64,000 bases of DNA from Styela clava (taxonomy: Eukaryota), in contig NC_135250.1 in the NCBI RefSeq assembly GCF_964204865.1, positions 4,898,001 through 4,962,000 on the forward strand, written 5' to 3'. Shown piece after piece: positions 53,160-60,722 of this stretch. The notes under the pieces were generated by a model. The model was given only the letters and a program-made list of their open reading frames with translations. It did not search any database and had not been told where the DNA came from. A program made the position numbers and the translations under genes. The stretch's first letter is position 1. Each line of letters opens with the position of its first letter.

Positions 53160-53240
53160 GAATCCCAACCCACATCGCGCTAGCCGTAATCGTTGTTGCA
53201 TAACAAGGCGCCATTATTAATGTGACGTCATATGGTGAAA
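53160..53240 (+). promoter_or_regulatory. Candidate proximal promoter of the THAP-BTB gene
   Basis: Perfect CRE palindrome TGACGTCA at 53223-53230 and GGCGCCATT (YY1/E2F-like) ~110-130 bp upstream of the ATG. Motif match only. Confidence 0.3.
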
Positions 53241-53334
53241 ACCTGTTGATAAACTGTGCGGAAGCATGTGATTTCTGGATTTAAGGGTTTATTTTCATTA
53301 ATATTACTAAATTAAGTACTGTAATACTATAATT

Positions 53335-56300
53335 ATGCCAAAGCAGTGTGTTGCTGGTGGTTGCACTAACAGTAGTGGAGATGGATTTCGCATGCAGGTG
53401 TGGCCGAAAGATCCCATTGTTGCCGTGAAATGGACTCAGTTTGTAAAGCAAACCAGGGAGAATTGGACTGGCCCTTCTGCTTACTCTTTATTATGCTCTG
53501 CCCATTTTGAGGAAGACTGTTATTTTAACACTCCAACCTTGGAACTATGCGGATATCCGGCAAGAAGAGTGAAAGATGCAGTCCCAACCATCCATAAAAG
53601 GATCCAAACCAAGCCATGCGACAGAGGGAGAAGACATGATGTAAAGCCCTACCGCTACCAATTGAAAAAATCCACCATACAGAGAAAACCTAGTCATCAT
53701 GATCTCACTGTAAGTAAATGTGTACGGCCAGTCACTTCTTGCCCATACTCCAGTACTCTAAGTACAGAAGTACCGTACCTGCGTTTACTTATTTATTAAT
53801 TTGAGTTTCTGAAATTGTGTGATTTGCAGATTTGTGTTGGAATACTCGCGGCAGTAGGGTGGTTCACGTAACCGCTGGTCTGTTACGGCTTCCTCAACCA
53901 TCAAGGCTCGGCGATGTGGTGCATTGTGCTAAGCATTAGGAATACACTCGCCACTGCATCTCTGATTACCCTGCGTGGGCTCGCAGGTTCGAATCCCATG
54001 TTGGGATGATTACGTACAAGAGGATTGCTGAACTCCTCGCTGCTGCAGGGTGGTTCACATACCAGCTGGTCGGTTACGGATTCCTCCATCATCAAGTCCA
54101 TGCTTCTGAAAACAAACAACTTCAGAACTTGCCGACTAATCCCATACCCGACCTGGACTGGAAACTGGACGAGAAGTCGTGGTTCGCCATATGATTAAGC
54201 CGTCTTATCGGCTTTCTTTTTCCCCAGAGATAAATATGTAAATCCTATCCTAAGTTAATCCTTTTCCTCTCCCTCTGGATAAATATGTGAATCCTATCGT
54301 AACCAACTTTATATTGCATTTAATAAATGAAATTATGAAGTACACCAGGGGCGTAGCCAGAAATTTTCAAAGGGGGGGTGGTTCTGCTGTTCTGAAATTT
54401 CTAAGTGGCAAGTTAGACCTTAGTAAAAAATGCTATGTCTGATACAAAAAAATATGGCAAATGTGCATATGGCATGTTTTGACAAATTCTGCTCGTGGTT
54501 TTGTTGCTTTTTTATGGAAAAAAAACACTTTTTTTGCAACCAATGGACCACTTGATTCTGATCGCAATTGTGTATTTCATTTGATAATTACAAATTATTG
54601 GCATAAATATAATAGCTAATGATAATATTTTTGTCGCAATATACTTTTTTAATAATTTTTTTGACTAGCGATAATACAAGCAATCTCTGTGCATCTCATT
54701 TCATGAGTCTGTAGTATATGCTGCGTTACATTGTAAAAAGTTTTCTATTAGATTTCAAAGTTATTACCTGTTAGTAAATTTGCATCTGAGTCGTTTTGTC
54801 AGTTTTACAACAAAACCTTATGGCTACACTTTTTGCAGAAAATTGAGCAATCAACTTCAATTCCGGTGAAAAGTGTTGACTGGCTGATGTTGGAACATAA
54901 TTATGCTTTTACATCCCATGAGAATAAAATGTAAGTTTGAGCATCCCTATACAGATTCGAATTTGAAACTATCCATTGACACATATTATTATAGGACTAG
55001 TATTTATGAGATTGATTAAAGTAAGAAGCTTTTACACAAAATTTGTCAAGAAAAGTTTATTAGTGCAGTGAACTTTGGTTTGAAACAATTTGTATGGTGT
55101 AGTGTTTTCTTTTCCTACTCCATAAAATGGTTGTTATCATTAATTACCAATGTTGATGCTAGCATTTATATCATATTTGCTTTGACAGAAAACAAGAACC
55201 GAACATTCAAATACAAAAACCAGATGAGAAAATCAATCCTAATGAAAACAAGGTATGTTAACTTTTTCCATTTGTCACATTTTATATTTCATTTATACAT
55301 TTATAATTTGAATACAAGTTTTATTCAACTTTAGTCAGCATTATTTTGTTATTTGAGGTATATCGCAATTGCATGATGGCGCCATTGCCCGAATCAACCA
55401 GTATCCTATAAATCCTAATGGCTCTTCATATTTTCGTATTTTATTTTTAATCTATCGTTGTTGTTTGTATGGTGTTCAGTATTGTATGTTATAAACCCAA
55501 TTCTTGTTCTATATATGCTGATGTAATTCAGCATAATAGGTGTCGCTGACACGATAACTTGTTAGTCTTTCGTGACTCCTCTGTGATTGCGAAACATTGT
55601 GTGTCTTTGATTCATTTTAATTTTATATTATTTGTTGACAATGTTTCATGCATGGCGAAATGAAATATCTGAATCTGGTGATACACACCAGGGCTTCAAC
55701 TCTACAGCCTATAGCCCTATACTGTGACATGTCACCTACAAGATTGTGCACAAATGATGCTGGTCTTATCTGTACTCATACTTCTGTTACAAGTGAAGTC
55801 TGGTACAAATTTGTTTTCTGTTTCAGATAGGATATAATCAGTCCACACAAATCAAAAAAAGAAAACATAGAAAAAAGAGGAACTTATCCATGTACGGTAC
55901 GTAATATGTATTACTATGTTGTGTATTGCTATCCTTTGTATCAGTGGTTTCCAACTTTTTTGGTGGAGCAGAACCCTATGAGCAATTCAAGAGCTTAAGC
56001 TCCTGAGCAGTAGTTTGATGTATTTTAGAGTATAAAATATAAACACATAGCGAACTTGATACTGTATTGGTCGAACAAAATGATCATTAAAGAGAAGCAA
56101 GTTTAATAATAGTGGCAAACCTAAGGTATGTGATTAACTGATTATATTTATAGAATATACAAATCTCTGATCTGAATAAAAATTACTGATTCCCTGGATT
56201 GTCGAAATCTGATTAAACATATTTCATCAGTGATAATTTATAATTGTCATGTTACTTATTATTTAATTTATTTCACAGGTGGTAAAACTAAACTTGAACG

Positions 56301-59126
56301 AAACCCTTTCCGGCATCGAAAACGTGTTACGCCTTCGAATTTTCCAAGAGACGAGAAAAGTAAAATTCTGGTAATGTTTATCATTAACAAATATTTTTTC
56401 TTATACAATGCTTTTTGTCATCACGCTCTGAACAAGGCCCTGCTAATAGGCAGCTGCTAATATAAAAAATACTACATTATTTTGGAAGTATCGAAACGAT
56501 TCCAAGTTGGTATTGTCTACCCAATTTATTACACCCTGGGTGATGTAGGGGCATGAGATTTAACCACAGTTAAGTCTAACGTGATAAACCACCTTATTGT
56601 ACTCAACTATTTCATTGTCAGTTAATCTCCTTTTAAATGTTCGTTCATTCATATACTAAAAAACTTTTCTTTATAAAAGTTGCCCAACCATCATGATTCA
56701 AAAGATGATATCACAATGCAGAAGATGAGAACTAATGTGAAGAAGGAAAGACAAAGCTTCCTATCATACAGTACGTGCAGAAATCTTCTGATAATTTAAG
56801 ACACAAAGATGTGTAGTTTCTGCCTGTCTATGTGATTAAATGCTGCTTTTGTATTCAAAAAGCCACACATAAAATTACTGCCTACAAAAAGTCACTTTTT
56901 AGGAAAATGAAAACCTAGAGCTATAGGTACACTACTGAAAATTTGTATAATCTGCAGTCTATAAGCTATTTATTTTATCAAAAAAATATCTTAGAAGCAT
57001 TTCCAACGTGAATACAAAAAACACTTACCCAATACTTTTTAGATCGAAAAACCAAATTGCAGAGAAATTTGACAAGGTCGTATGACAATACAAGACGAAA
57101 ATCCGAAAACAAACAGGACACAGGTATGCCATGCATGCATTTACAATTTATTGAAAAAAGGTGATACCAAATTTGGTATCAAAGGCAATATAGTTATGGA
57201 ATTGGTGTGAAATAAAAAAAAAAAATCCTGCGCAGAAATTCATATCTGTATGGGCTAAAAAAGCAGAAAGAGTAGCCCAGAGGAAAAATTAGTCATGCTA
57301 AAACTTTTTCTGGTCTCTGAACTACACCTGTCACTTTGTTTATTTATCCATACCTATTCTTGAACTCGAAAGATATAATTTGATTGCCTTGAATTTAGTT
57401 TTACACAAAGCTTTTTACATCCTTGAATTTCTTTGTCTGTAGGAGATTGCAAAGACAACCTCCAATGGATAAAAACTGAACCAACCTCTGAAAATGAATC
57501 TTTTGATAAGGCGGCAAAACCGGATGAAGAAGTTGAAGGTATGGGAACCATTTTGGATATTAAAGTACGCTTTCGTTCAGTTACTGGATATTGAATCTAA
57601 TTAGGACCTTAAAACACATGAAAAAAGTTCTTTATTATCTGCCTTTTATAAAGGGCTTTCACAGCTTCGATGCAATTCGGCTCTGGTCTAAGTTATCTTG
57701 TAGATCAGGGGTCGGGAACCTTCTTGGTCAAGAGAGCCATAAAAGGTACATATTTTCAACTGCATTTCCGTGCGAGCCATATAGCATTTCTTCACTTAAA
57801 TCAGGCCTGAAATTTTTACTCAAAGTCAACACATACAATGTCAATATACATTTGATGTGACTTCTGATGCTGCATGTTGTCGCTGCGGGCCTTGAACGGC
57901 TGCTCACATGCAGCACAAGTTGAAATCTATGATAGTCATCACCTTCTTTCGTTTACGCATATCCGTAGTATTCTAAAAACTAGCTTTGCTAGTCCGATTT
58001 GAATAGGACAAATACTGTAACTAGTACGTACAAACAGACGCAAAGCTTCATTCTATTGCTCCGCGACTCTATCGCTTGTGATGTCACAAAATATGTTCCA
58101 GAATCCCCTAATTTTGTCACAATACCTGTCTGGTAACTCTTAGATAACATAGACATGCGCTGGCCGCGCATTCTCGAACGTATCCGCAAATTTTTTGCCA
58201 CATTTGGCTATAAAAGAGTTTAAAATGTTGTAACGATGGTGAGCTTAGCTTTAGAATAGTAGATTTTTCTGGGAGCCATATGCCGTCACCAAAAAAGCCA
58301 TATATGGCTCACGAGCCATGGGTTCCCGACCTCTGTTGTAGATGGTGGACCTGGGGGTTGGCTTGAGATTTTCAACTTGTGGAACCAACATAATTGCGCT
58401 CAACAGAATGTTTAAATTGTTTCAGATACTCATGCCACATACCAAACAGATCTTCTGGAATCTCTCTATGCAATGCAGAAGAACGGAAAGCTCTGCGATT
58501 TAACATTCAAAGTCAACAGTTCCAAGACAAGACGACAGGTGACTTTGAAAGCACATAAACTCATATTTGCAACAATATCAAAGAAAATAAGACTTCATAG
58601 GAATGAAGTTTTCGAAGTCGATGAAGAATTGAGTATGCAAGATCTTATCAAGATTATAGAATTTGCTTATACTGGAAAAATCATTGGCCTTGAAGACATG
58701 GAAGCTGATGAAATTGGTATGATACGTGAAGCAGCTATTTCTTTGGATATTTCAAAATGTGTGGATTATATTGACAAAATATATTTGAAAAACAACAAAA
58801 TGAATGGAGAAATCTTATTGGACAAAGAGATTCTTCATGGTGATGGAGAAAAAGAAAACGATTATCTTGATATCAAACCTCCGAATATAGATGAATATCT
58901 GCCACTTTATTTTACTCAAAATGAGTCGGATGTGGAATCTACTCAAGATTATGATACGACCGATACAGAGGATGAAATTTCAATCAAAAAATGTACTGAT
59001 TATGATAACGACGATGAAACCCCGATTAAGCCGAAAACTTTTACAATGAGTCGACATCCATCTTTTCCTTCTAAATTGCTAAAAGATACTTCCTCTGTTA
59101 AAGAGGAATATATTGTTATTGATTAA
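53335..59126 (+). CDS. THAP zinc finger + HCF-1-binding motif + C-terminal BTB/POZ protein (~553 aa, 9 exons)
   Basis: Exons 53335-53709, 54839-54930, 55189-55252, 55827-55896, 56279-56370, 56680-56770, 57043-57123, 57443-57538, 58426-59126. All are GT-AG with compatible phases, 1662 nt total. THAP: CxxxxC...W...CSAHF...AVPTI. EHNY at 54893-54904. BTB: LLESLYAMQKNGKLCDLTFKV...KAHKLIFA...IIEFAYTG. Confidence 0.85.
53905..54250 (+). mobile_element. tRNA-derived SINE, near full length, in THAP-BTB intron 1
   Basis: A-box-like TGGTGCATTGTG, B-box GGTTCGAATCCC (53986-53997), 3' tail ATAAATATGTAAATCCTATCC shared with other copies. Confidence 0.8.
57706..58335. mobile_element. hAT (Charlie-like) MITE in last intron of THAP-BTB gene
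   Basis: CAGGGGTCGGGAACC...GGTTCCCGACCTCTG with perfect TSD ttgtagat. Confidence 0.9.
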
Positions 59127-60722
59127 ATGGAACATTTTCATGACTTTGGTCTTGTATAATGAGTAGAAGATGGGGCGTTTTGGAAGCAGGATATAACGCA
59201 TTATTAGCAGTATGTTTCCTTGCCATCGTACTATAATTATCGTGCTTGGGTTACAAGATTGAAGTCACGTGAAAGACAGTTTATTATATAAGATTGCCTA
59301 AAGACAATAAATAACATGAATGGTCAGTTAGGCTTTCCCATTTTAGTCATCTGATGGGACAAGATCTGGTAAATAATTACGATATTAGTCATTTTAATAT
59401 CTGACTTGGACGGCAGGCCCTGAAGTTTGTGCAGGAATGCCTACTGTCTATCTAATTGATTCAAAGTGATTTAAAAAGAAAAGCTGGATTCTGATTGGTT
59501 GAATATTATTCCAACACACAGATTGGCATGTGGTAAATAAAGGACTTCAGTAGCATAAATGAAGTGATATTGTGTCTGGAGTCTTGTTTGTGAGAGCTGA
59601 TACATAGCTCGATGGTTGGCACCTTGACTGCAATTGCACCACTGATTACCCTGCATGATTCGGTACTAGAAGATTGCTTTAAACATGTTAGGCTCTTCCA
59701 TTTTAGTTATCTGGTGGGACAAAAGACTTGGGTGGCATGTGGTAAAAGAGGAACACCACTGATTACCCTGCATGAACTCGTAGGTTCAATTGTGATGAAA
59801 GATTGATTGTCTCGCTATCGCAAGGCAGTTCACTGACAATAAACTGTATCTGACCTGAACGGCAGGCCGAACGAAGCAAAACATCGTCCCAAACAGCCTA
59901 CTTTTATAGGCGTGTTCCAGAATTTTTGATTTAAAGCAATTTTAAAACACTAGCTGAATTCTGATTAAACTAGTATATTGTCCTGGAGAATTGATTGTTT
60001 TGGGCTACCCTATTTATTATATCACTACCCCTGGCAAATCAATCAGTGGGTTTTGGTGGAACCATTGCTGAAAGTCTCAACAAAAGATCGTTATATAAGC
60101 TCCAGTGTTGCAAAATTGAAGAATAGGATTCCCATTCTACAACTTATCACTCGAGTGAGTAATGTTTGGTACTAAAACCATTTTGCCTTGGTGAATATTA
60201 TGGCTATCAAAAACGTCACTTTGGCAATGAACGAACAATTCAGACCTTTGATCGGAAGTCGGAAAAAAAAATTTCCAAAAGTCTTTTCCATATTCATCCA
60301 CGAAATTGCCTACACTTACTCTAAGTTAATATTGAAAATATGTTGCTACATTAAAACAGAATTAGAAACTCTAAATCAAACTCCTGATGTTCTGAATAGA
60401 ATCAAACAAAAAAATGCAGCAATATATGAAATACCACAAGTCAACTTCAAAAAGCTGTTTTTAAACATGCTATTTATTGAGGCAGTGATAACATCACGAT
60501 AAAACAACTTGCAAAGAAATAATAAAACATTTAAAAACAGCAGCACCAAGATTTTTCAATCAAAAAGCACATGGTTAAAATTCTAAAAAACATTTGAATC
60601 TTTCACAATATTGCCTCAAATAAAGGGAAAAAACAACGAAATGAACACTAACACAGTACAAAGCACGAAATAGCTTGGCAGTACTTAACAAACGGAAAAG
60701 GTAAAATAGGTTTCATGATAAA

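What the first reader, a model, noticed from the sequence alone, without database searches (positions are those of the whole stretch)
53335..59126. Intron-split THAP / HCF-1 motif / C-terminal BTB fusion gene hidden between two apparently separate ORFs
Seen: the ORF track shows a THAP ORF and a BTB ORF 4.7 kb apart. Seven small intervening exons join them in frame with canonical GT-AG sites, giving ~553 aa. The linker holds EHNY, IKQEP, IKTEP and a basic KKRKHRKKR cluster; the protein ends VKEEYIVID. Known: THAP factors typically carry a (D/E)HxY HCF-1-binding motif and a C-terminal coiled coil. BTB transcription factors usually have BTB at the N-terminus with C2H2 fingers; psi-K-x-E is the SUMO consensus. 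Inference: a host transcription factor in which BTB replaces the coiled coil, possibly coupling THAP DNA binding and HCF-1 to BTB dimerisation, corepressors or CUL3. No transposase domain, kelch repeats or C2H2 fingers are present. I do not know a characterised chordate protein with this architecture.
Basis: partly seen in the sequence, partly recalled or inferred. Interest (0 to 1): 0.75.

Follow-up and report, generated by a model that had tools for sequence, protein, structure and literature searches.

The report
THAP–BTB gene in a sea squirt
The two separate-looking reading frames are the first and last exons of one expressed sea-squirt gene for a probable DNA-binding regulator with an unusual domain order, but public annotation already lists it (as uncharacterised) and the same domain pair has been reported in octopus.

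Summary
Observation confirmed. Nine + strand exons (53335-59126, 1662 nt, all GT..AG, no internal stop) encode 553 aa: a THAP zinc finger (Pfam 1.5e-10), a basic linker and a C-terminal BTB (Pfam 7.5e-6; predicted fold matches solved BTBs) with a disordered acidic tail. Spliced contigs from three studies carry the seven joints between exons 2 and 9. One 1718-nt contig runs from the THAP exon into the 3' UTR. A DNA-like run has none of these joints.

The gene is not hidden. RefSeq lists it as Styela clava "uncharacterized protein LOC120343388", 553 aa. It is single-copy. Exon polymorphisms are 13 synonymous to 6 non-synonymous. No relative beyond S. clava was found apart from weak BTB matches.

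Interpretation partly supported:
- EHNY sits where THAP proteins carry their HCF-1 motif, but 8.9% of shuffles contain such a motif.
- SUMO-type motifs are no more frequent than chance.
- No BACK/3-box follows the BTB, which argues weakly against a CUL3 adaptor role.
- One paper reports BTB/POZ on most octopus THAP genes, so the domain pairing is not unprecedented.

Most likely it is a lineage-restricted nuclear THAP factor that pairs through BTB instead of a coiled coil. Interest is modest.

The parts
53236..53334 (+). 5' UTR. The earliest transcript contig starts at 53236. There is an in-frame stop at 53308 and no in-frame ATG between it and the start codon.
   Evidence: (X1 record 1 covers 53236-53600)
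53335..53709 (+). Exon 1, residues 1-125. THAP zinc finger at residues 5-87, with C5-x4-C10-x43-C54-x2-H57, P24, W33, F58 and AVPTI 82-86. Donor GTAAGT.
   Evidence: (human THAP2 5.5e-7)
54839..54930 (+). Exon 2, residues 126-155 plus 2 nt. The HCF-1-binding-motif-like EHNY (residues 144-147) lies at 54893-54904.
55189..55252 (+). Exon 3, holding (I)KQEP
55827..55896 (+). Exon 4. Basic cluster KKRKHRKKR (residues 187-195, nt 55854-55880), which looks like a nuclear localisation signal.
56279..56370 (+). Exon 5, with a second basic run, RHRKR (residues 212-216)
56680..56770 (+). Exon 6
57043..57123 (+). Exon 7 (81 nt). It is skipped in the RefSeq isoform X2 (526 aa) and included in the contigs of the three runs laid.
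57443..57538 (+). Exon 8, holding IKTEP
58426..58802 (+). Exon 9, first part: BTB domain, residues 322-446. Its first helix starts upstream of the ORF's first ATG at 58473, so the BTB cannot be a gene of its own starting there.
   Evidence: Pfam 336-435; pLDDT mostly above 90 for exon-9 residues 11-120; TM 0.73-0.82 to solved BTB domains
58803..59126 (+). Exon 9, second part: acidic tail predicted disordered (D+E 26%, net charge -17), ending VKEEYIVID, then stop TAA at 59124-59126.

Best explanation
This is a single-copy, spliced and expressed host gene of the ascidian Styela clava (RefSeq LOC120343388, 'uncharacterized protein'). Its 553-aa product has four parts: an N-terminal THAP C2CH zinc finger; a basic linker of about 230 residues with no recognised domain, carrying an NLS-like KKRKHRKKR and one EHNY motif; a C-terminal BTB domain of the long, dimer-forming type found in BTB-zinc-finger and KEAP1-type proteins; and a disordered acidic tail. 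Shown here: the gene structure, the transcript, both domains, single copy, an excess of synonymous polymorphism, and the lack of detectable relatives outside S. clava. Inferred: the protein enters the nucleus and binds specific DNA through THAP. It pairs through BTB, doing the self-association job that the coiled coil does in vertebrate THAP proteins. It acts as a transcription or chromatin regulator, possibly recruiting HCF-1 through EHNY. Inferred origin: a lineage-restricted exon combination. The THAP exon's nearest relatives in this genome sit in a repeated element, 36-38% identical. The BTB's only close relatives are attached behind other zinc-binding modules.
For: Gene and transcript. 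Domains. Identity with the RefSeq model: (the window's exon peptides match P0007, XP_039268486.2). Single copy: 1 full match among 19 scored candidates; 1 among 12. Constraint: 13 synonymous and 6 non-synonymous among the 19 exon variants listed, 14 of 19 at third codon positions. Of the 12 residue differences between the two RefSeq versions, 10 lie in residues 100-320 and none in 329-553. By sequence, 21 of the 22 nearest solved BTB chains are transcription-factor BTBs (ZBTB17, PLZF, BACH1/2, ZBTB7A, NAC1 and others) and 1 is Kelch-like. EHNY lies at 144-147, shortly after the THAP domain, and is the only [DE]HxY in the protein. The motif definition and its usual position near the coiled coil come from passages of PMC13631171. 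BTB kinship: the only own-genome matches are two loci at 27-28% identity, although the genome has at least 448 BTB candidates. One is an 853-aa ORF with zf-C17orf113 and Integrase_H2C2 in front of the BTB. Three of the 5 nearest database hits place the BTB match downstream of FLYWCH or of zf-C17orf113 + Integrase_H2C2; Pfam itself confirms BTB in two of these three. The THAP's nearest own-genome relatives L005, L006 and L008 are copies of one repeat, 94-97% identical in DNA on three contigs.
Against: No function was tested: DNA binding, dimerisation, nuclear import and HCF-1 binding are all inference. The EHNY motif arises by chance in 8.9% of shuffles, and its conservation could not be checked because no orthologue was found. 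The exhaustive search with exon 9 gave only 5 weak BTB matches beyond the protein itself. Word-seeded searches gave 1 of 9, 0 of 259 and 1 of 5947 candidates, the single hits being the protein itself. A gene with no detectable orthologue may be young and dispensable. Foldseek ranks KEAP1 BTB, a CUL3-binding domain, first, so the fold alone does not separate a dimerisation role from a ligase-adaptor role. The full-length single-sequence model was too poor to show whether the linker has a coiled coil (mean pLDDT 35.8).
Confidence: 0.6

Rival explanations
1. It is a DNA-tethered cullin-3 adaptor: the BTB recruits CUL3 so that proteins near THAP binding sites, or the factor itself, are ubiquitinated.
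For: The best Foldseek matches include KEAP1 BTB (E 4.6e-8). The genome has a very large BTB repertoire dominated by BTB-BACK-Kelch genes. Adaptors such as MATH-BTB proteins also place the BTB behind the recognition domain (recalled knowledge).
Against: Pfam finds no BACK or 3-box-like region. The model shows no helices after the BTB core, and exon-9 residues 127-232 have pLDDT below 50. By sequence the BTB is nearest to transcription-factor BTBs (21 of 22 PDB hits). Among own-genome BTBs it matches only two unusual loci and none of the Kelch arrays.
Confidence: 0.15
2. It is a young, lineage-specific product of exon shuffling that is transcribed but has no maintained function.
For: No orthologue or full-length relative was found in any protein search. 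THAP and BTB are both expanded families here (PMC8122590 passages). The linker evolves fast (10 of 12 differences between versions).
Against: The frame is intact in all three 553-aa versions on record. There are 13 synonymous and 6 non-synonymous exon variants, with 14 of 19 at third positions. All eight introns are spliced cleanly in three studies. The C-terminal 225 residues are identical between the two RefSeq versions.
Confidence: 0.15
3. These are two separate genes (a THAP gene and a BTB gene), and the joined form is a read-through or assembly chimera.
For: The ORF track alone shows two ORFs 4.7 kb apart. In X1 and X2 the transcript assembly is broken inside exon 1.
Against: One contig in X6 spans exon 1 to the 3' UTR. 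The same seven joints occur in three studies. No joint or contig suggests a separate start for the BTB. The first BTB helix is encoded upstream of the first ATG of the BTB ORF.
Confidence: 0.02
4. It is a gene of a mobile element (P-element or ISL2EU-type, which carry THAP).
For: The THAP exon's closest own-genome relatives are copies of a repeated element. Earlier notes of this scan describe THAP-bearing transposons in this genome.
Against: It is single copy. It has no transposase or nuclease domain. It shares no DNA similarity with those elements. It has eight spliceosomal introns that themselves hold repeats.
Confidence: 0.03

Closest known systems
Vertebrate THAP transcription factors (THAP1, THAP2, THAP11 and relatives)
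   Same: N-terminal C2CH THAP finger; human THAP2 is the best solved match (5.5e-7) and THAP1 follows at 0.0033. One Asp/Glu-His-X-Tyr motif lies about 55 residues after the domain. A basic nuclear-localisation-like cluster is present.
   Different: No coiled coil was detected; the C-terminal self-association module is a BTB domain followed by an acidic tail. The 2026 THAP review does not contain the word BTB. No orthology was shown.
Octopus THAP (and CENPB) genes carrying BTB/POZ (Front Cell Dev Biol 2023, PMC10027918; passages and section 5 read)
   Same: THAP and BTB/POZ in one predicted protein, within a lineage-specific THAP expansion.
   Different: A different phylum. The order of the domains is not stated in the text I could read (the figure and supplements were not available). 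No sequence relative of the Styela protein was found, so the combination probably arose independently. None of these proteins is characterised.
BTB-zinc-finger factors (PLZF, BCL6, ZBTB17/Miz-1, ZBTB7A) and BACH1/2
   Same: These are the nearest solved BTB sequences and have the same long-form BTB fold. They also combine a BTB with a sequence-specific DNA-binding domain.
   Different: In those proteins the BTB is N-terminal and the DNA-binding domain is C2H2 or bZIP. Here the order is reversed, the DNA-binding domain is THAP, and there is no C2H2.
Drosophila mod(mdg4), pipsqueak, fruitless: BTB/POZ joined to transposon-type DNA-binding domains (passages of PMC1702500)
   Same: The same principle: a BTB/POZ recombined with a DNA-binding domain of transposase origin to make a new factor.
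   Different: In mod(mdg4) the POZ is N-terminal and the finger is FLYWCH. Those are insect lineage expansions and are not related by descent.
zf-C17orf113 + Integrase_H2C2 + C-terminal BTB proteins (own genome L011 5261-7822; unnamed proteins P0004, P0005) and FLYWCH + BTB (P0003)
   Same: These are among the nearest BTB relatives found anywhere, and the BTB match lies behind a zinc-binding module, as it does here.
   Different: Only 27-30% identical in the BTB; different N-terminal modules; intronless where seen; functions unknown.

Membership tests
THAP domain family (Pfam PF05485) | Match to the family profile above the curated cut-off, over the whole domain | tested here: met
   42.1 bits against a cut-off of 23.9, profile 1-87 of 87; 43 bits in the genome scan
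THAP domain family (Pfam PF05485) | C2CH zinc signature C-x2-4-C-x35-53-C-x2-H with conserved P, W, F and the AVPTIF box, at the N-terminus (consensus recalled from Roussigne et al. 2003, which I did not read here) | tested here: met
   C5, C10, C54, H57, P24, W33, F58 and AVPTI 82-86 in the exon 1 translation; they align with human THAP2
THAP domain family (Pfam PF05485) | Zinc-dependent sequence-specific DNA binding | not testable with these tools
   Needs EMSA, SELEX or DAP-seq
BTB/POZ domain (Pfam PF00651) | Profile match above the cut-off | tested here: met
   26.5 bits against 20.5 on the ORF; 25.4 bits on the full protein. The match is weak and divergent.
BTB/POZ domain (Pfam PF00651) | BTB fold | tested here: met
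   AlphaFold2 model with pLDDT mostly above 90 for exon-9 residues 11-120. Foldseek gives 243 PDB matches at E<=0.001, the listed ones nearly all BTB domains, with target TM 0.73-0.82 among the best.
BTB/POZ domain (Pfam PF00651) | Homodimerisation or oligomerisation | not testable with these tools
   No multimer prediction or experiment was available
Canonical THAP1-type factor (THAP + HCF-1 motif + coiled coil) | HCF-1 binding motif Asp/Glu-His-X-Tyr | tested here: inconclusive
   EHNY at 144-147 is present, but 8.9% of 20,000 shuffles have such a motif and 1.7% have one in residues 100-200. It is kept in all RefSeq versions. Binding was not tested.
Canonical THAP1-type factor (THAP + HCF-1 motif + coiled coil) | Coiled coil next to the motif | tested here: inconclusive
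   No helix is predicted between residues 71 and 318, but the model is unreliable (mean pLDDT 35.8). The sequence after EHNY is rich in proline.
BTB-zinc-finger (ZBTB) family | N-terminal BTB with C-terminal C2H2 fingers | tested here: not met
   The BTB is at residues 336-435 of 553 and no C2H2 hit is found
CUL3 substrate adaptors (BTB-BACK-Kelch, MATH-BTB) | BACK or 3-box helices after the BTB, plus a substrate-binding domain | tested here: not met
   No BACK, Kelch or MATH by Pfam; the region after the BTB is predicted disordered. CUL3 binding itself was not tested.
P-element / THAP9 transposases | Transposase catalytic domain; multiple copies; terminal repeats | tested here: not met
   Only THAP and BTB are found; single copy; no DNA similarity to the repeated THAP-encoding copies

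The most novel reading that the evidence does not exclude
This is a Styela-restricted invention. A THAP first exon of transposon type was spliced, through newly recruited small exons, onto a BTB of the rare clade that otherwise sits behind integrase-derived or FLYWCH zinc modules. The result would be the first chordate THAP factor that uses BTB instead of a coiled coil. It would join HCF-1 recruitment to BTB-mediated pairing or polymerisation, or to CUL3, at THAP sites.
Probability: 0.15. Interest if true: 0.5.

Novelty: new variant of a known kind. Interest (0 to 1): 0.3.

Why it matters
If the inferred mechanism holds, the gene is a natural experiment in swapping the self-association module of a THAP factor (BTB for coiled coil). 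It would also be an example of how expanded THAP and BTB repertoires in stolidobranch ascidians recombine into new regulators. It could be used to ask whether pairing alone is what the coiled coil contributes to THAP proteins. It does not bear on a long-standing open question. Both domains are well known, the gene is already in RefSeq as an uncharacterised protein, and the domain pair has been seen in octopus.

Tried and rejected
Orthologues and the wider spread of the architecture. I ran an exhaustive HMMER search with exon 9 and three word-seeded searches. I also ran two Atlas look-ups: one search gave only generic BTB clusters at 0.90 or less, and one search gave a best score of 0.78. None found a THAP-BTB relative outside S. 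clava. These tools cannot search other tunicate genomes, so absence of an orthologue is not shown.

Other THAP-BTB genes in the same genome. I compared by eye the coordinates of 128 THAP matches and the 150 best BTB matches. About one pair within 10 kb is expected by chance. I saw two same-strand pairs under 10 kb:
- The C6 pair is an intronless BTB-BACK-Kelch gene that begins with its own ATG, with an unrelated THAP fragment 2 kb upstream.
- The C8 pair (L010) was fetched but not examined.
The BTB list was cut at the best 150 of at least 448 candidates, so weak BTBs like this one are not covered.

SUMO reading: rejected as evidence, because the motif count is at chance level.

Full-length structure from a single sequence: uninformative.

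HCF-1 motifs in paralogues: the repeat-borne THAP ORFs show none in the ORF that holds the THAP domain, which settles nothing.

Literature:
- (THAP domain, BTB domain, domain architecture): 0 papers.
- (six phrasings of THAP-BTB): 0 papers.
- Searches gave the papers cited.
- Whether S. clava has HCF-1 was not tested.

Full report
**What is in the sequence**

The window is AT-rich eukaryotic DNA (GC 0.31-0.42 per 2 kb). ORF 53335-53799 matches Pfam THAP over the whole profile (1.5e-10). ORF 58473-59126 matches Pfam BTB weakly but above the cut-off (7.5e-6).

Between them, open segments in the three + frames can be linked by seven small exons. The nine exons are 53335-53709, 54839-54930, 55189-55252, 55827-55896, 56279-56370, 56680-56770, 57043-57123, 57443-57538 and 58426-59126. 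Their properties:
- Together they make 1662 nt, that is 553 codons plus TAA.
- Every intron starts with GT and ends with AG behind a pyrimidine-rich tract.
- The phases fit and there is no internal stop.

An in-frame stop lies 27 nt upstream of the ATG.

**Transcript evidence**

Of the 13 public runs listed, nine hold 18-24% of the sampled words of 53335-59126. That is about the exon share (1662 of 5792 nt). Four hold 67-73%.

I laid contigs of X1, X2 and X6 (three studies) and of the DNA-like X10 on 53230-59229.
- Each of X1, X2 and X6 has one contig with GT..AG joints at 54930|55189, 55252|55827, 55896|56279, 56370|56680, 56770|57043, 57123|57443 and 57538|58426, after the cut shifts the tool itself gives.
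- X10 has depth 0 at all seven joints.
- X6 record 18 (1718 nt) places 53410-53709 directly beside 54839-54930 and continues to 59229. One assembled transcript therefore joins the THAP exon to the BTB exon and the 3' UTR.
- In X1 and X2 the assembly is broken inside exon 1. Their 175-nt contigs stop matching exactly at 53709.

The runs' label 'RNA' is the tool's guess. The intron-less joints, absent from the DNA-like run, are the evidence of splicing. Contigs cannot give transcript ends or expression levels.

**Already annotated**

The exhaustive search with exon 9 returned a 553-aa protein that matches residues 322-553. Its 90% cluster holds four NCBI entries of Styela clava:
- 'uncharacterized protein LOC120343377'
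- 'LOC120343388' isoform X1, in two versions
- 'LOC120343388' isoform X2, 526 aa

The window's exon peptides equal XP_039268486.2 (P0007). The LOC120343377 protein differs from it at 12 of 553 residues. Four of those differences (V31E, R107H, I164M, R273K) are variants seen in the laid contigs. The assembly searched here has one copy only. The two RefSeq loci therefore look like alleles, or a collapsed duplicate from an earlier assembly.

Isoform X2 lacks exactly the 27 residues of exon 7. The three runs laid include exon 7. The gene was thus not hidden from annotation. It is simply unnamed and unstudied.

**The protein**

THAP finger. Exon 1 carries C5-x4-C10-x43-C54-x2-H57, P24, W33, F58 and AVPTI 82-86. 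It aligns best with human THAP2 among solved structures (5.5e-7), and THAP1 is next.

Linker. Residues 91-321 have 23% K+R and a net charge of +22. Pfam finds no family there, either exon by exon or on the whole protein. The linker contains KKRKHRKKR and RHRKR.

BTB domain. A model built from an 8-row alignment is confident over exon-9 residues 11-120 (pLDDT mostly above 90). It shows helix-strand-strand-helix-helix-strand-helix-helix-helix.
- Foldseek gives 243 PDB matches at E<=0.001. The best are KEAP1, myoneurin, ZBTB9, BCL6, NAC1, LRF and PLZF BTB domains, with target TM 0.68-0.82.
- By sequence, 21 of the 22 PDB hits at E<=1 are transcription-factor BTBs and one is Kelch-like.

Tail. The last 106 residues are acidic (net -17) and predicted disordered. 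No BACK, Kelch, MATH, C2H2 or transposase domain is found.

**Motifs tested against chance**

[DE]HxY occurs once, at residues 144-147. Of 20,000 shuffles of the protein, 8.9% contain at least one and 1.7% contain one within residues 100-200. The position resembles that in vertebrate THAP proteins, where the motif lies near the coiled coil. The 2026 review also reports that a canonical motif does not always mean HCF-1 binding (passages). The motif is a fair lead, not a finding.

Psi-K-x-[DE] occurs 4 times against 2.8 +/- 1.6 expected, and 30% of shuffles reach 4. This is no evidence for SUMO sites.

A full-length single-sequence model was too poor (mean pLDDT 35.8) to say whether the linker holds a coiled coil.

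**Selection and copy number**

Of the 19 exon variants listed, 13 are synonymous and 14 fall on third codon positions. Three further variant rows were not shown by the tool. The differences between the RefSeq versions cluster in the linker (10 of 12), and the last 225 residues are identical. The locus is single copy and shares no DNA with the repeated THAP-encoding elements. This is the pattern of a host gene under constraint.

**Relatives and origin**

Beyond S. clava, the exhaustive search found only five BTB matches at 25-30% identity, with E from 6e-6 to 9e-4.
- Three of the five place the BTB match downstream of another zinc module: FLYWCH in P0003, and zf-C17orf113 plus Integrase_H2C2 in P0004 and P0005.
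- In P0005 the BTB is seen by the search but not by Pfam.
- All five come from unnamed assemblies.

In the own genome the BTB matches only two loci at 27-28% identity, although at least 448 BTB candidates exist. The match is reciprocal. One of the two is an intronless 853-aa ORF with zf-C17orf113 and Integrase_H2C2 in front of the BTB.

The THAP exon's best own-genome matches (36-38% identical) belong to a repeated element. Its copies on three contigs are 94-97% identical in DNA. This fits earlier notes of this scan on THAP-bearing transposons in this genome.

Word-seeded searches for relatives found only the protein itself: the THAP region (1 of 9 candidates), exon 9 (0 of 259) and the whole RefSeq protein (1 of 5947).

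These results fit a lineage-restricted exon combination, but they do not prove it. Other tunicate genomes could not be searched with the tools at hand.

**Literature**

- PMC10027918 (passages and section 5 read): states that Octopus THAP genes, 25 in number, mostly carry BTB/POZ, as do most Octopus CENPB genes. The domain order is not given in the text, and the figure and supplements were not available.
- PMC8122590 (passages): counts 21 THAP genes in S. clava and notes a THAP expansion in stolidobranch ascidians. It mentions BTB only for 12 ZBTB genes.
- PMC1702500 (passages): describes insect POZ proteins that repeatedly combined with transposase-type DNA-binding domains.
- PMC13631171, the THAP review: contains no 'BTB'.
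- Searches for six phrasings of THAP-BTB found 0 papers. A search for THAP domain + BTB domain + domain architecture also found 0.

I found no characterised protein with this architecture and no chordate example in print. The searched library lacks most subscription journals.

**Verdict**

The interpretation as one host gene for a THAP-linker-BTB protein is right. The added functional colour ranges from plausible but unproven (HCF-1), through unsupported (CUL3), to chance level (SUMO).

The most likely working model is a nuclear, sequence-specific THAP factor that self-associates through a transcription-factor-type BTB in place of the usual coiled coil. It is a new variant of a known kind. The gene is already in the databases as an uncharacterised protein, and a parallel domain pairing is reported in octopus. 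Interest is modest.

Noticed in passing
window 53830-54430 (intron 1): Very high-copy repeat. Summed contig depth reaches 135,656 in the DNA-like run X10 and 17,300 in X2, against about 50 for flanking sequence. It contains two 71-nt direct copies (80% identical, 191 nt apart) and two 42-nt copies.
   Followed up: partly
window 57630-58430 (intron 8): MITE-like element of about 640 bp. It has 20-nt terminal inverted repeats at 57701-57720 and 58321-58340 (85% complementary) and a very high copy number by contig depth (up to 28,784 in X10).
   Followed up: partly
window 53223-53230: Perfect palindrome TGACGTCA (cAMP-response-element-like), ending 5 nt before the start (53236) of the earliest transcript contig. 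It is a possible promoter element of the gene.
   Followed up: no
L011 5261-7822 (own genome, same contig C1, about 24.8 Mb downstream of the window): Intronless 853-aa ORF with zf-C17orf113 (2.5e-6), a weak Integrase_H2C2 match and a C-terminal divergent BTB that Pfam does not recognise. Two unnamed database proteins (P0004, P0005) have the same layout. This looks like a small, undescribed family, and its BTB is the nearest relative of the BTB studied here.
   Followed up: partly
L012 6961-7722 and 6-3470: The second BTB paralogue (253-aa ORF, 51% identical to the L011 BTB) lies 3.5 kb downstream, on the same strand, of a 1154-aa open frame with ubiquitin and BAG6 domains. Whether they are one gene was not checked.
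   Followed up: no
L005, L006, L008 (contigs C8, C5, C10): Copies of a THAP-encoding repeated element, 94-97% identical in DNA over up to 2 kb. Their THAP domain is the closest own-genome relative (36-38% identical) of the gene's THAP exon.
   Followed up: partly
own genome, whole: The BTB family is hugely expanded. There are at least 448 first-look candidates, and the best 150 are all at E<=1.1e-18. Most are in long open frames arranged in tandem arrays on C5, C6, C14 and C17. There are also 128 THAP matches, many in near-identical short frames typical of repeats.
   Followed up: no
P0003 (unnamed database protein, 518 aa): FLYWCH zinc finger at residues 8-70 with a BTB at 246-330. This is another case of a transposon-type finger placed in front of a BTB, the reverse of the order in Drosophila mod(mdg4).
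   Followed up: no
window 53335-59126 compared with RefSeq: RefSeq lists two loci (LOC120343377 and LOC120343388) whose proteins differ at 12 of 553 residues, while this assembly has one copy. Four of the differences are polymorphisms seen in the laid contigs, so the two loci are probably alleles.
   Followed up: partly
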